A stretch of 64,000 nt of DNA from Oculina patagonica (Eukaryota): positions 1,302,001-1,366,000 of the forward strand of contig NC_135769.1 in assembly GCF_052425735.1 (NCBI RefSeq), given 5' to 3'. Positions 27,550 through 41,083 of this stretch are shown one piece after another; positions within the stretch are counted from its first letter, which is position 1; the number at the start of each line of letters is the position of its first letter. The position numbers and the translations under genes were made by a program. Below the pieces are notes generated by a model. The model was not told where the DNA came from and did not search any database. It saw nothing but the letters and a program-made list of their open reading frames with translations.

Positions 27550-28002
27550 ATGTTCAATTCAATCTTCAATTCCATTTGGCCTGTCCCGATTGGCTTTCTA
27601 GTAGCTCTAGTGATCATCATGGCGTGCCTATTTCGTAAACGATTCTTCAGTTGCTTGAGGAATAAACAAAACAGCGTCGAATCTGGGACTTACAGGAGAA
27701 ATGGCGAGTTCGACTCAAATGTTCCGCCAAGTAATCGAACACAAGAAATCACATCACCAGGACAAGAATTCACTAATGGACAAGAACAGGGCGCAATCCA
27801 CGAATGGACACTTCCAAATAGTGAAAGCACCATTAATATTACTTCTTCTCCCGTAAATAACACTTTGGCTCGTGGAAACATAAATCAAGCTACAACAAAC
27901 GATCAAGAGTCATTCCGTATGGAAGAAGCGCCGCCATCATACAGCTCTTTGTTTTATTGTCCTCCGCCAAAATACGAAGACGTCGTGTTGAGCGCGCAAT
28001 GA
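27550..28002 (+). CDS. Single-pass membrane protein without ectodomain (type III-like), with tandem PY motifs
   Basis: ATG 27550; TM IWPVPIGFLVALVIIMACLF then RKR; disordered tail ending APPSYSSLFYCPPPKYEDVV. Confidence 0.8.
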   Translation: MFNSIFNSIWPVPIGFLVALVIIMACLFRKRFFSCLRNKQNSVESGTYRRNGEFDSNVPPSNRTQEITSPGQEFTNGQEQGAIHEWTLPNSESTINITSSPVNNTLARGNINQATTNDQESFRMEEAPPSYSSLFYCPPPKYEDVVLSAQ

Positions 28003-29377
28003 GTTTTTGAGAGCACGGGGAACTGTAAACTTACAAAACAAAATGTTTCATAGTTTTATATCGATCGTTAGATAAATTATTGTAAGTACAGAATTTGATG
28101 ACTTTTTTTATTCTGTCTGTTTGTATACGTAAATGGACAACTTGAGACAGCTGCATTATTTCACGTGGTTTTATTACGAGTACAAAACGCGCAGCCATGA
28201 GTTGAAGCACGGAACATTGATGCCGGCAAAGATTTGTAAATGAACTGAACTGTGGATTACATTTTAGCATATCACGATGACAAGTCAATATTTTGACAAA
28301 TGATCTTCATACTGTGCATGCTACGAGGCTTGATATTATGAAGGTCAAGTAGTTCCCATGACATTTTGGAACACAACAGACCAAACAGTATTATAATAGG
28401 CCATTTTCGAAATATTAAAATACTATTATTAAAACTGTATTTCGAGGCTCATGGCTATAGGAATAAACTACGAACGAGGTCGATCGAGTCACGTCGAGGC
28501 AAAAGGATGAATAAGTAATTAATTTATTTTGATGTATTCTTATAAACTTCTGTAAAAAAATACTATTAAAAAAGTGAAGTAAGGTGTTTTTAGTTATTTT
28601 GTTTTTCCCTACACGACAGTAGATTTGTGGCTTTCTCCAAAGAACGTGTGGCGAGTTCGCGCGCTCGAGGCGTGCGCGAAGCATTAAAGCGTGACCCTCA
28701 AGTCACACGAGCTTTTCTCTCCTTCCCCTCCGTGTTCAACGCGCGTGTATGTACACGTCGCTTTTCAAAACCGGTTCTCCTGCAGAGAAATGATCAAGAG
28801 AGACAACTGATCTTCTTTTCCTTTATGGCTAAGGGATACAGAGAACATACCATAAGCCTAATGTAGCATTATAGAGTTGTTTCAGATTGGTATTATTGTT
28901 CTACGCTAAATTAAGGACACTTGTGACGTCTATCCGGAGCTGATAGCCGCAGCTAATTTGAGCGAAATTAAAGATATTTTTAATCCAGATCCTAAAATTA
29001 GTTGAGTCGTCGCGTTTTTGAGCTTGAGACAGATATTTTTGTAGTTGTGTTCCAAAACACCGTTTTAAATAAAGGTTCTATTGTTCTTCAAGGTATCGTT
29101 GCAAAATTAACAAAGAATGGTTTTTCTCTTGTTTTCACTGAACGTTAGTATAAGCATTAAAGCATAACTAAGCATAGGTATAGGCATAAGCATATAAATC
29201 AGGAAAAAAGCCTTGACAGTGCTTTGCTATATTCTAAAGCACTCAGGAGGCGATGAGAGACCAAATTCAACACATTTCGTCACTTTTAAAGTTGTAGACT
29301 TGTTTAAGTTCTTCAGTATAAAGTACATTCAAGATTCACAATCAATATTATATCTAAATGTACGTCTGGATGTTTTT

Positions 29378-29945
29378 TACATTTCTCTCCTGACATCACC
29401 CCCCCCCCTTTATTTTACTTTCAACACCCCCTCCCCAGCTTTGTGCATTAATTTTGCATAAAGGCTCGCCCCACAATCCCACCACAAAAAAGATGCCCTT
29501 CGCTTTAAAATTGCCGTAATGGTGTTTGTAGCAATGTTATTTTTTATTACAAAAAATCTTTACATAAAAGCGAAATTAACATTTTCTCCTGACATCACCC
29601 CCACCCTGTTATTTTACTTTCAGCTCCCCTCCCTAGCTTTGTGAATTTATTTTACATAAAGGCTCGCTCACAATCCCACCACAAAAAGATGCCCTTCGCT
29701 TTAAAATTGCCGTAATGGTGTTTGTAACAATGTTATTTTATATTACAAGAAATCTTCACATAAAAGCGAAATTAACATTTCTCTCCTGACATCACCCCCC
29801 GGTCATTTTACTTTCAACACCCCCTCCCCAGCTTTGTGAATTTATTTTACATAAAGGCTCGCCCCACAATCCCACCACAAAAAAGATGCCCTTCGCTTTA
29901 AAATCGCCGTAATGGTTTTTGTTACAATGTTATTTTATACCACAA
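29378..29945. repeat. Tandem repeat, ~198 bp x ~2.8
   Basis: CTCCTGACATCACCCC...AAGATGCCCTTCGCTTTAAAA recurs at ~29387, 29586 and 29783. Confidence 0.9.
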
Positions 29946-29958
29946 GTTATTTTCACAA

Positions 29959-40310: not shown

Positions 40311-40332
40311 TGACGTCACATCAACCGGAAGT
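40311..40332 (+). promoter_or_regulatory. Adjacent CRE (TGACGTCA) and ETS (CCGGAAGT) consensus sites ~150 bp upstream of the 40478 ORF
   Basis: Exact consensus matches at 40311-40318 and 40325-40332; function is inferred only. Confidence 0.35.
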
Positions 40333-40477
40333 AATCAATCCGCTGGCTGATTTAAAGCGGGGTAAGGTATGTTTTGAAGTCATTACAAATAAACAAGAGA
40401 TACAGAAAGGTCCTTCATTCCTTCAGATAACGAAATCACCACACCGGAGTTAGTGATTTTATTACCCGGCGAACGAT

Positions 40478-41083
40478 ATGGGGCTCAGCCGAAAACTCAC
40501 GGATTTTACGCTAAGTTTGGCGATAGTTTTTGTTTCGTTGGCGAATGTTTCATCACAATGCGGTACTGACCAAATGAAAACCTGCCCTGACGGACTTTGC
40601 GATGATGAATGTGAAACTTCCAGTGCTTCAGCTAGCGGTGTGGAAGCGATAGTGGCTATCATGAGTGTCTCCGTGGTGTTAATTCTTGGTTTAGTTATAC
40701 TTTTGGTTTATATTTGCCTTAAACAAGGACCGTGGTCGCAAAGCGGCGACGCAAATGACTCCTGTGAAAACACATGTGAAAGCACAACTGTGGAAATTCC
40801 AGAATACCTGATGCGGCGACGCTTTTCATCACTGAGTATGATGTCGGGTCCTCCGCCATATTTCAGCCTTTTCAGATTCTTTTTGAACGAGAATGGTGAA
40901 CTAACAAGTACAGCGGTGATCGGAGAGAACATGAGAACTGGAAATGCGCGCCTTCCTAGCATCGATCTACCGCCTGACTATGGCGTGCTGTTCGCACAGT
41001 CTCCACCACCGTACGATCACGTTATACAGAGGGAAGAGCCAAGAGTTGTAGGAACAAGTGTCAGCAACATCTCTGAATGTTAA
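40478..41083 (+). CDS. Type I single-pass protein with 4-Cys mini ectodomain and three PY motifs
   Basis: Signal peptide; CGTDQMKTCPDGLCDDEC; TM ending YICLK; tail GPPPYFSL and LPPDYGVLFAQSPPPYDHV. Confidence 0.85.
   Translation: MGLSRKLTDFTLSLAIVFVSLANVSSQCGTDQMKTCPDGLCDDECETSSASASGVEAIVAIMSVSVVLILGLVILLVYICLKQGPWSQSGDANDSCENTCESTTVEIPEYLMRRRFSSLSMMSGPPPYFSLFRFFLNENGELTSTAVIGENMRTGNARLPSIDLPPDYGVLFAQSPPPYDHVIQREEPRVVGTSVSNISEC

What the first reader, a model, noticed from the sequence alone, without database searches (positions are those of the whole stretch)
27920..41025. Conserved dual-tyrosine tail PPxYxxLF-x3-PPxYxxV with ITAM-like spacing in two otherwise dissimilar members
Seen: the 27550 protein has PPSYSSLFYCPPPKYEDV and the 40478 protein has PPDYGVLFAQSPPPYDHV. 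Both are YxxL-x7-YxxV. Established: the ITAM consensus is YxxL/I-x6-8-YxxL/I; PY-tyrosine phosphorylation blocks WW binding; Hydractinia allorecognition proteins carry ITAM/ITIM-like tails. Inference: a phospho-switch between tandem-WW (ubiquitination/endocytosis) and tandem-SH2 (Syk-like) binding on the same tyrosines. A simpler reading is extended PPxYxxL plus YxxPhi sorting signals.
Basis: partly seen in the sequence, partly recalled or inferred. Interest (0 to 1): 0.72.

Follow-up and report, generated by a model that had tools for sequence, protein, structure and literature searches.

The report
Coral membrane proteins with double PY tail
Two neighbouring stony-coral genes encode small membrane proteins that share a strongly conserved tail with two PPxY motifs, most likely a docking site for Nedd4-type ubiquitin ligases; it is not an immune-receptor ITAM, because the second tyrosine never has the required leucine or isoleucine.

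Summary
Gene B (27550-28002, +) ends in PPSYSSLFYCPPPKYEDV. Gene A (40478-41083, +) carries PPDYGVLFAQSPPPYDHV.

In 72 tails that carry the module (68 coral orthologues and 4 divergent clusters), the two tyrosines are 11 residues apart in 69, 10 apart in 2 and 12 apart in 1. L at +3 of the first tyrosine is invariant, and F at +4 is present in 70 of 72. The two genes share only this roughly 20-residue module (hhalign E 8e-6) and are neighbours in other corals too.

The ITAM reading fails its own consensus. The residue at +3 of the second tyrosine is V in 69 tails, A in 3, and never L or I. The prolines of both PPxY cores are conserved, which an ITAM does not explain. In gene B the spacer itself is nearly invariant.

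My best reading is a bivalent extended PY module (PPxYxxΦΦ) on cytosolic tails of small single-pass membrane proteins. It would dock WW-HECT ligases, which the genome encodes, as in Commissureless, Ndfip, WBP1, VOPP1 and Melan-A. No binding was tested.

A phospho-switch to SH2 domains is possible: a Syk-like gene is present, and YEDV resembles the Src SH2 site YxEI/V. This is not shown.

The proteins are unannotated and apparently coral-restricted. I class them as a new member of a known kind, of low to moderate interest.

The parts
27550..28002 (+). Gene B: intronless ORF of 150 aa. It has an 8-residue N-terminus, one TM helix, and a cytosolic tail of about 120 aa that ends in the dual PY module.
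   Evidence: ORF. There are 35 orthologues, mostly 148-167 aa, named in Desmophyllum pertusum and Porites. Transcript-like contigs are colinear with the genome.
27129..28774 (+). Probable transcript of gene B: a 5' UTR of about 410 nt, the CDS and a 3' UTR, with no splice joints.
   Evidence: Contigs from two runs cover 27129-28510 and 27141-28774 with no joints. The RNA status of these runs is the tool's guess.
27574..27630 (+). TM helix of gene B (IWPVPIGFLVALVIIMACL), followed by RKRFF. The positive charges after the helix imply a cytosolic tail.
   Evidence: Maximum Kyte-Doolittle 19-residue window of 2.54 at residues 9-27. W10, P11, V12, P13 and G15 are invariant.
27931..27987 (+). Dual PY module of gene B: PPSY-SSLF-YCP-PPKY-EDVV.
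   Evidence: The module is invariant or nearly so in 35 orthologues.
40478..41083 (+). Gene A: intronless ORF of 201 aa. It has a signal peptide, a mini-ectodomain with four cysteines, one TM helix, and a cytosolic tail with three PY motifs.
   Evidence: ORF. There are 34 orthologues at 45-86% identity, one cluster named in Pocillopora damicornis.
40559..40612 (+). Ectodomain C-x7-C-x4-C-x3-C (C28, C36, C41 and C45 invariant).
   Evidence: Alignment A1.
40649..40705 (+). Core of the TM helix of gene A (IVAIMSVSVVLILGLVILL).
   Evidence: Maximum Kyte-Doolittle 19-residue window of 3.14 at residues 58-76.
40814..40873 (+). Conserved RRRFSSLS (a basophilic-kinase-type site) followed by the first PY motif, GPPPYFSLF.
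   Evidence: R113-R115, S117, S118, S120, G124-P126, Y128-S130 and F132 are invariant.
40970..41026 (+). Dual PY module of gene A: PPDY-GVLF-AQS-PPPY-DHVI.
   Evidence: P166, Y168, L171, F172, P176, P177 and Y179 are invariant.

Best explanation
Genes A and B are old, syntenic, intronless coral genes for small single-pass membrane proteins. Their cytosolic tails end in a shared 19-20-residue module made of two extended PY motifs in a fixed register: [L/P]PxY-x-x-L-F-x3-P-P-x-Y-(D/E)-x-V-(V/I).

I infer that each PPxYxxΦΦ unit is a class-I WW-domain ligand. I also infer that the pair docks a Nedd4-family WW-HECT ubiquitin ligase, such as the Itch/WWP-like four-WW enzyme encoded in this genome. 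The proteins would then act as membrane adaptors that recruit or activate the ligase, or as cargo routed to endosomes and lysosomes, as described for Commissureless, PRRG4, Ndfip, WBP1, VOPP1 and Melan-A.

The hydrophobic residues at +3 and +4 would strengthen WW binding and could also serve as YxxΦ sorting signals. The fixed 7-residue linker would hold the two motifs in register for two WW domains of one ligase.

Shown here: the sequences, their conservation, the synteny, the likely expression of gene B, and the presence of the ligase genes. Inferred: membrane topology, WW binding, the bivalent mode and the adaptor function.
For: - **PY cores.** Both cores fit [L/P]PxY in 71 of 72 tails, with a freely varying x position. 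This is the conservation pattern expected for a WW ligand.
- **LF extension.** L at +3 and F at +4 of the first motif are present in 72/72 and 70/72 tails. The same YxxLF extension occurs on the unpaired third motif PPPYFSLF of gene A. This matches the known extended PY motif PPxYxxL of ENaC (PMC2582799). The PPxY(E/D)xV/A tails of this module and of the window paralogues match the acidic-then-hydrophobic extension of GLPSYDEAL in Comm (PMC5578492).
- **Paralogues.** Other genes of the window cluster carry PPSYEEVV, PPSYEEVM, PPSYEEAL and PPSYDEAL.
- **Nearest neighbours.** Protein-language-model neighbours are WBP1-like, TMEM92, TMEM207, BEAN1, MLANA, VOPP1, PRR7, PMEPA1/LDLRAD4 and Comm clusters. 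Weak Pfam hits go to MLANA, TMEM52 and CYYR1, and the paralogue at 57005 hits WBP-1 at E 3.7e-4.
- **Ligase genes present.** There is an Itch/WWP-like gene with four WW exons plus HECT at C4:27897578-27911730. Two further WW-HECT loci lie on C7 and C1.
- **Linker length matters.** Inter-PY linker length is known to govern binding to WW tandems (PMC6744271).
- **Common origin.** The two genes keep their order and strand about 16 kb apart in another coral. The most divergent pair also shares one contig.
Against: - No binding was tested.
- Neither protein reaches any Pfam threshold, so the link to known PY adaptors rests on motif and architecture, not on demonstrated homology.
- The 7-residue linker does not fit the one WW-tandem mode that is structurally defined, which needs exactly two residues. 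A bivalent mode for this spacing is conjecture.
- The strict invariance of V at +3 of the second tyrosine, and of F-Y-C in the gene B spacer, goes beyond what WW binding alone is known to require. A further, unknown partner may read the module.
Confidence: 0.6

Rival explanations
1. One reading: the two tyrosines form an ITAM-like unit. Unphosphorylated, they bind tandem WW domains. Doubly phosphorylated, they bind the tandem SH2 domains of a Syk-family kinase.
For: The spacing lies within the ITAM range and is conserved (7 in 69 of 72 tails). The first tyrosine is YxxL in all tails. A Syk-like gene, with tandem SH2 exons followed by a tyrosine-kinase domain (HRDLAARN, DFG, WYAPE), lies at C14:8948433-8958979. 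Cnidarian Syk and ITAM-bearing receptors are described. Phosphorylation of a PPxY tyrosine can switch partners.
Against: The second +3 residue is V in 69 tails and A in 3, never L or I, so the consensus is met 0 times. Conserved prolines at -2 and -3 of both tyrosines and an invariant spacer sequence in gene B are not ITAM features. Gene A's extra PPPYFSLF carries the same extension without a partner tyrosine. The proteins have little or no ectodomain to sense a ligand: gene B has 8 residues and gene A about 25.
Confidence: 0.05
2. A single-tyrosine switch on top of WW binding. The second motif, PPKYEDVV in gene B or PPPY(D/E)xV in gene A, is phosphorylated and then binds a Src-family-type single SH2 domain instead of a WW domain, as in ARRDC3 Y394.
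For: ARRDC3 Y394 lies in a PPxY motif followed by YxEI/V. When phosphorylated it binds the c-Src SH2 domain; unphosphorylated it binds WWP2 (PMC12213294). Gene B has an invariant YEDV (YEEV once), which is close to pYEEI/V. The genome has many SH2 exons.
Against: Gene A has YDHV, YHIV and YDAV, with no conserved acidic +2 residue, and three distant tails have A at +3. There is no evidence of phosphorylation. The resemblance covers only three or four residues.
Confidence: 0.12
3. The module is mainly a pair of tyrosine-based sorting signals (YxxΦ) read by clathrin adaptor mu subunits, and the prolines are secondary.
For: Both tyrosines are followed at +3 by a hydrophobic residue in 69 of 72 tails, and the tails sit on small membrane proteins.
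Against: The proline pairs are as conserved as the tyrosines. A at +3 in three divergent tails is not a Φ residue. The F at +4 and the acidic +1/+2 residues are not explained.
Confidence: 0.1
4. The PY module binds WW proteins other than HECT ligases (YAP, WWOX, MAGI or KIBRA-type scaffolds), so the proteins act in polarity or growth signalling and not in ubiquitin-dependent sorting.
For: The genome has many non-HECT WW exons. TMEM207 and VOPP1, which are among the atlas neighbours, are WWOX partners in my own knowledge. PRRG4 PY motifs also bind MAGI proteins.
Against: The KIBRA/MAGI high-affinity mode needs a linker of exactly two residues, and here it is seven. The acidic-hydrophobic extension resembles Nedd4-type ligands.
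Confidence: 0.1

Closest known systems
Commissureless / PRRG4 / yeast Rcr class of short single-pass PY-motif proteins (PMC5578492)
   Same: These are short membrane proteins with poorly conserved sequence apart from two or more cytosolic PY motifs that have acidic and hydrophobic extensions (GLPSYDEAL). They bind Nedd4/Rsp5 and control the surface level of other membrane proteins.
   Different: No detectable sequence homology. The coral module has a fixed 11-residue tyrosine-to-tyrosine register and an LF extension. Gene A has a four-cysteine stub, not a Gla-like domain, and gene B has no ectodomain.
Shisa-like STMC6 group (WBP1, VOPP1, TMEM92, CYYR1)
   Same: Signal peptide, small cysteine-rich ectodomain, one TM helix and a proline-rich tail with PPxY motifs. 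These families are among the nearest atlas neighbours.
   Different: The defining six-cysteine C*C*CC*CC pattern is absent: gene A has four cysteines without CC pairs, and gene B has none. Pfam WBP-1 does not hit A or B.
Melan-A/MART-1 (Pfam MLANA)
   Same: A very short N-terminus, one TM helix and a cytosolic tail ending in two nearby PY motifs, close to gene B's layout. There are weak Pfam hits and atlas neighbours. In my own knowledge it is ubiquitylated by Nedd4 and Itch.
   Different: All hits fall below threshold. It is vertebrate-specific, and I recall its motif extensions as different.
ENaC extended PY motif PPxYxxL (PMC2582799)
   Same: The first motif of the module, and PPPYFSLF in gene A, carry an invariant L at +3.
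   Different: ENaC has one motif per subunit on a channel. Here two motifs are locked together on a small adaptor-like protein, with an added invariant F at +4.
EBV LMP2A N-terminal tail (PMC8190631)
   Same: One cytosolic tail combines two PY motifs that bind Itch/AIP4 with an ITAM that binds Syk.
   Different: In LMP2A the ITAM tyrosines lie between the PY motifs and are different residues. In the coral tails the same tyrosines would have to serve both roles, and the ITAM consensus is not met.
ARRDC3 Y394 PPxY switch (PMC12213294)
   Same: A PPxY tyrosine followed by YxEI/V. Phosphorylation moves the partner from WWP2 to the Src SH2 domain. YEDV in gene B resembles this site.
   Different: ARRDC3 is a soluble arrestin-fold protein with a single tyrosine and a single SH2 partner. 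No phosphorylation evidence exists for the coral proteins.

Membership tests
ITAM | First tyrosine in YxxL/I | tested here: met
   L at +3 in 72 of 72 tails.
ITAM | Second tyrosine in YxxL/I | tested here: not met
   V in 69 and A in 3 of 72 tails, never L or I. A strict-consensus regex finds no match at the module. Consensus as quoted.
ITAM | Spacer of 6-8 (or 6-9) residues between the two YxxL/I units | tested here: met
   Spacer of 7 in 69 tails, 6 in 2 and 8 in 1.
ITAM | Phosphorylated on both tyrosines and bound by the tandem SH2 domains of a Syk/ZAP-70/Shark kinase | not testable with these tools
   Only the presence of a Syk-like gene (tandem SH2 plus tyrosine kinase) at C14:8948433-8958979 could be shown.
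Class I WW ligand (PY motif) | [L/P]PxY core | tested here: met
   First motif: PPxY in 70 tails, LPEY in 1 and SPSY in 1 (P0064). Second motif: PPxY in 72 of 72.
Class I WW ligand (PY motif) | Motif lies in a cytosolic, accessible region | tested here: inconclusive
   Topology is inferred from the signal peptide and TM helix in gene A, and from the TM helix followed by RKRFF in gene B. There is no experimental topology.
Class I WW ligand (PY motif) | Physical binding to a WW domain | not testable with these tools
   WW-HECT genes exist in the genome. Binding needs a bench assay.
Extended PY motif (PPxYxxL, ENaC type) | Leucine at +3 of the PY tyrosine | tested here: met
   Invariant L in the first motif of the module, and L131 nearly invariant in PPPYFSLF of gene A. 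Definition.
Shisa-like STMC6 (WBP1/VOPP1/TMEM92) | Six ectodomain cysteines in the C*C*CC*CC pattern | tested here: not met
   Gene A has C-x7-C-x4-C-x3-C only, and gene B has no ectodomain. Pattern as given.
Shisa-like STMC6 (WBP1/VOPP1/TMEM92) | Match to Pfam WBP-1 (PF11669) above the gathering score | tested here: not met
   No WBP-1 hit for A or B or their orthologues. Only the paralogue at 57005 gives 21.6 bits, against a cut-off of 28.1.
KIBRA/MAGI-type tandem PY ligand | [quoted passage not shown] | tested here: not met
   Seven residues lie between the first tyrosine and the second PP. Rule.
YxxΦ sorting signal | Tyrosine with a bulky hydrophobic residue at +3 | tested here: met
   First tyrosine: L in 72 of 72. 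Second tyrosine: V in 69 of 72 and A in 3. Whether an adaptor mu subunit reads it cannot be tested here.

The most novel reading that the evidence does not exclude
The dual PY module is a two-state docking site. Unphosphorylated, it recruits a Nedd4-family ligase. After phosphorylation by a Src-type kinase, the same tyrosines are read by SH2 domains: the tandem SH2 of the coral Syk-like kinase as a V-type ITAM variant, or a Src-family SH2 on YEDV. A small coral membrane protein would then toggle between ubiquitin-dependent down-regulation and tyrosine-kinase signalling.
Probability: 0.07. Interest if true: 0.7.

Novelty: new member of a known kind. Interest (0 to 1): 0.25.

Why it matters
If the reading is right, these are two unannotated, apparently coral-restricted members of the class of small PY-motif membrane adaptors that steer Nedd4-type ubiquitin ligases to membrane cargo. 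The window holds at least six such genes in tandem (five complete ORFs and one lone exon). That suggests corals have expanded this adaptor class, which may bear on how they regulate transporters or receptors at membranes.

The locked 11-residue register of two extended PY motifs is a clean natural test case for how motif spacing tunes binding to multi-WW ligases. It does not open a new kind of system. The more exciting ITAM idea fails the consensus test.

Tried and rejected
- **Complex prediction.** I submitted the gene B tail with two WW exons of the Itch/WWP-like gene to complex prediction. The verdict was "no answer" (score 0.07, mark 0.34). This counts neither for nor against binding.
- **Pfam.** Scans of both proteins and of 41 orthologues gave nothing above threshold.
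- **Paralogues in the genome.** A protein search found none. The DNA pattern for PxYxxLF-x3-PP gave 65 hits against 67 in the control, and the six candidates I translated were chance matches.
- **Tail-profile scan.** A scan of 1.84 billion representative proteins gave only 12 hits. Two of them (P0070, P0073) are unrelated repeat proteins that match a single PPSY context.
- **P0072 homologues.** The search returned only P0072 itself, so the taxon of the divergent clusters remains unknown. Cluster look-ups and contig look-ups gave no organism names for them.
- **PolyA raw-read runs.** X23 and X24 laid no reads on gene B. This is no test, because the organism's presence in those runs was not shown.
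- **Recent gene conversion.** I rejected this as the cause of the shared tail. The two modules differ at many synonymous sites, for example TAC/TAT, TTG/CTG, TTT/TTC and CCT-CCG/CCA-CCA.
- **Hidden upstream exon.** I considered an upstream exon giving gene B an ectodomain and rejected it. The contigs are colinear from about 27130, and most orthologue models start at the same methionine.
- **Spacing statistics.** PMC8509885 was read for PY-motif spacing statistics and held none.
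Full report
**What is there.** The window is part of a 529-Mb stony-coral genome (contig C12). On the + strand it carries a tandem series of small genes for single-pass membrane proteins with PY-motif tails: five complete ORFs at 27550, 40478, 44370, 53885 and 57005, and a lone PY exon near 56291. A similar gene without PY motifs lies at 62919.

The finding concerns two of them:
- **Gene B (27550-28002, 150 aa).** It has eight N-terminal residues, one hydrophobic helix (IWPVPIGFLVALVIIMACL, Kyte-Doolittle 2.54) followed by RKRFF, and a tail of about 120 residues ending APPSYSSLFYCPPPKYEDVVLSAQ.
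- **Gene A (40478-41083, 201 aa).** It has a signal-peptide-like start, a short ectodomain with four invariant cysteines (C-x7-C-x4-C-x3-C) and a strong TM helix (3.14). Its tail carries EIPEY, RRRFSSLS, GPPPYFSLF and then PPDYGVLFAQSPPPYDHVI.

Both read YxxL-x7-YxxV.

**Is it more than chance?** Yes.
- Gene A has 34 relatives (45-86% identity) and gene B has 35 (49-77%) in public coral data. Named examples come from Desmophyllum pertusum, Porites evermanni, Porites lobata and Pocillopora damicornis. In my own knowledge these span both major scleractinian clades.
- In gene B the block PPSYSSLFYCPPPKYEDV is practically invariant, while the rest of the tail averages 0.42-0.66 column conservation. 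In gene A the module and PPPYFSLF are the best-conserved cytosolic parts.
- A profile-profile comparison of the two families aligns only the tails (probability 83.7%, E 8e-6).
- A profile of the module, run against 1.84 billion representative proteins, recovered only the two families, four divergent clusters and two unrelated repeat proteins. The divergent clusters are P0071 (PPSYGSLFYYPPPKYEDVV), P0072 (PPPYSSLFYCPPPNYEDAV), P0075 (PPPYSSLFYSPPPSYDAAIL) and the fragment P0074.
- In the coral's own genome the DNA pattern for PxYxxLF-x3-PP occurs no more often than its reversed control (65 against 67). Of the hits that read as plausible peptides, I translated six, and none was a further member; only genes A and B are real instances.

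**Spacing and position counts.** Over 72 tails the tyrosine-to-tyrosine distance is 11 in 69, 10 in two gene A orthologues and 12 in the fragment P0074.

| Position | Residues observed (72 tails) |
|---|---|
| First tyrosine, +3 | L in 72 |
| First tyrosine, +4 | F in 70 |
| Second tyrosine, +3 | V in 69, A in 3, never L or I |
| Second tyrosine, +4 | switches freely between V and I (66 of 72; T once, A once in gene A) |
| x of each PPxY core | varies (D/E/A/P in the first motif of A; K/R/N/S in the second motif of B) |

The proline pairs of both cores are kept. Other PY-tail genes of the window have tyrosine-to-tyrosine distances of 14, 14 and 16. The register is therefore a property of this module alone.

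**Origin.** In another coral assembly the gene B orthologue lies about 16 kb upstream of the gene A orthologue on the same strand. The same acidic 458-aa gene lies between them and a 290-aa PY gene lies downstream, as in the window. Contig lengths show that several other A/B pairs share a contig, including the most divergent pair, P0034 and P0071. The two modules differ at many synonymous sites, so the likeness is not recent gene conversion. The simplest history is an old tandem duplication. After it the module stayed under strong constraint while everything else diverged.

**Expression and gene model.** Contigs from two runs of different organisms, which the tool guesses to be RNA, cover 27129-28510 and 27141-28774. 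They are colinear with the genome and have no joints. This supports an intronless transcript of about 1.4-1.6 kb and no hidden ectodomain exon for gene B. Many orthologues come from short, transcript-sized contigs. Gene A expression was not tested directly.

**What it most likely does.** The pattern of constraint is that of class-I WW ligands: invariant P-P, free x, invariant Y, then hydrophobic residues at +3 and +4.
- The extended PY motif PPxYxxL is established for ENaC and Nedd4 (PMC2582799).
- An acidic-then-hydrophobic extension (GLPSYDEAL) is essential in Commissureless and shared with PRRG4. That paper groups Comm, PRRG, Rcr, Shisa, CYYR1, WBP1, VOPP1 and TMEM92 as short PY-motif membrane proteins that control the localisation of other surface proteins (PMC5578492).
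- The window paralogues end in PPSYEEVV, PPSYEEVM, PPSYEEAL and PPSYDEAL.
- Language-model neighbours of both proteins are exactly this class: WBP1-like, TMEM92, TMEM207, BEAN1, MLANA, VOPP1, PRR7, PMEPA1/LDLRAD4 and Comm. These are leads only. Weak Pfam hits point the same way.
- The genome encodes the presumed partners. An Itch/WWP-like gene has four WW exons (WEQRVD…, WERRTD…RNFENWQ, EKRVESNGRVYFVNH…, LPSGWEMRY…) followed by HECT exons at C4:27897578-27911730. Two more WW-HECT loci exist.
- Work on WW tandems shows that the linker between two PY motifs decides how strongly a tandem binds (PMC6744271). A conserved linker is therefore what one expects of a bivalent ligand.

One caveat applies: the seven-residue linker here is not the two-residue KIBRA/MAGI mode. 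I therefore read the module as a bivalent Nedd4-family docking site on adaptor- or cargo-type membrane proteins, with a possible second use as YxxΦ sorting signals. Binding, topology and function are all inferred.

**The ITAM idea.** The consensus used for cnidarian ITAMs is Yxx[I/L]-x6-9-Yxx[L/I].
- The first half and the spacer fit. The second half never does (0 of 72 tails).
- V is fixed at +3 while the next residue toggles between V and I. Selection for an L/I pocket is therefore unlikely.
- Conserved prolines, an invariant spacer in gene B and the unpaired PPPYFSLF in gene A all argue that the shared features belong to PY motifs.
- The readers do exist. A Syk-like gene with two SH2 exons and a kinase domain (HRDLAARNILV…DFGMS…KWYAPE) is at C14:8948433-8958979, and cnidarian Syk is documented.
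- Switching of a PPxY tyrosine between WWP2 and the Src SH2 domain has been shown for ARRDC3, whose site is YxEI/V. YEDV in gene B resembles that site.

A single-SH2 switch is thus a better-precedented variant than a Syk ITAM. Both remain speculation.

**Comparison with known families.** The two proteins work like Comm, Ndfip, WBP1 and Melan-A-type PY adaptors, but they are not demonstrable members of any of those families. No Pfam threshold is reached. The six-cysteine Shisa-like pattern is absent. EBV LMP2A is the nearest known tail that joins PY motifs with an ITAM, but it does so on separate tyrosines.

**Verdict.** I class this as a new, lineage-restricted member of a known kind, of modest interest.

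The complex prediction gave no verdict and is not used as evidence.

The earlier scan note s1-286898, on the tail-sharing subfamily at 53918-57727 of this same window, agrees with my independent finding. It did not change the reading.

Noticed in passing
window 40814-40837: Gene A has an invariant RRRFSSLS just before its first PY motif (R113-R115, S117, S118 and S120 invariant). It fits the RRxS and RxRxxS basophilic-kinase consensus sites (my own knowledge). It could place the adjacent PY motif under serine-phosphorylation control.
   Followed up: partly
window 41078-41080: Most gene A orthologues end in a C-terminal cysteine (…SEC, …GC, …TC). Gene B orthologues nearly all end in Q. The meaning is unknown.
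   Followed up: no
window 35560-36897: An intronless ORF of 445 aa, very rich in Ser, Asp and Glu, with no Pfam hit. It lies between genes B and A, and a 458-aa gene sits in the same position in another coral (L041:3880-5256).
   Followed up: partly
window 29960-30295 and 37395-37724: Two arms of about 340 nt, 94-95% complementary and about 7.1 kb apart, flank the 35560 gene in inverted orientation. They are probably two copies of a dispersed repeat. Three tandem units of 175 nt lie at 29397-29964.
   Followed up: partly
window 44370-45209, 53885-54355, 56291 region, 57005-57727: Further + strand genes for small TM proteins with PY tails (LPPY, PPPY and PPSYDEAL; PPPYRCV…PPSYEEAL; PPSYEEVVL; PPAYDVV…PPSYEEVM). 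Their tyrosine-to-tyrosine distances are 14-16. The gene at 57005 has a larger cysteine-rich ectodomain and a sub-threshold WBP-1 hit.
   Followed up: partly
G000:C14:8948433-8958979 (-): A Syk/ZAP-70-like gene: two complete SH2 exons followed by tyrosine-kinase exons with HRDLAARN, DFGMS and KWYAPE.
   Followed up: partly
G000:C4:27897578-27911730 (-): An Itch/WWP (Su(dx))-like E3 ligase gene. It has four WW domains, each split just before GWE by an intron, then HECT exons.
   Followed up: partly
G000:C2:41129058-41129279 (-): Two closely spaced WW domains sit inside a 731-aa open frame that runs into a ubiquitin-specific-protease cysteine box (GLRNLGNTCYMNS). This suggests a WW-bearing deubiquitinase that could also read PY tails.
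   Followed up: no
window 17222-18537: Long minus-strand ORFs made of TVTV, SLSL and HCH low-complexity repeats. These are probably a simple-sequence array and not a gene.
   Followed up: no
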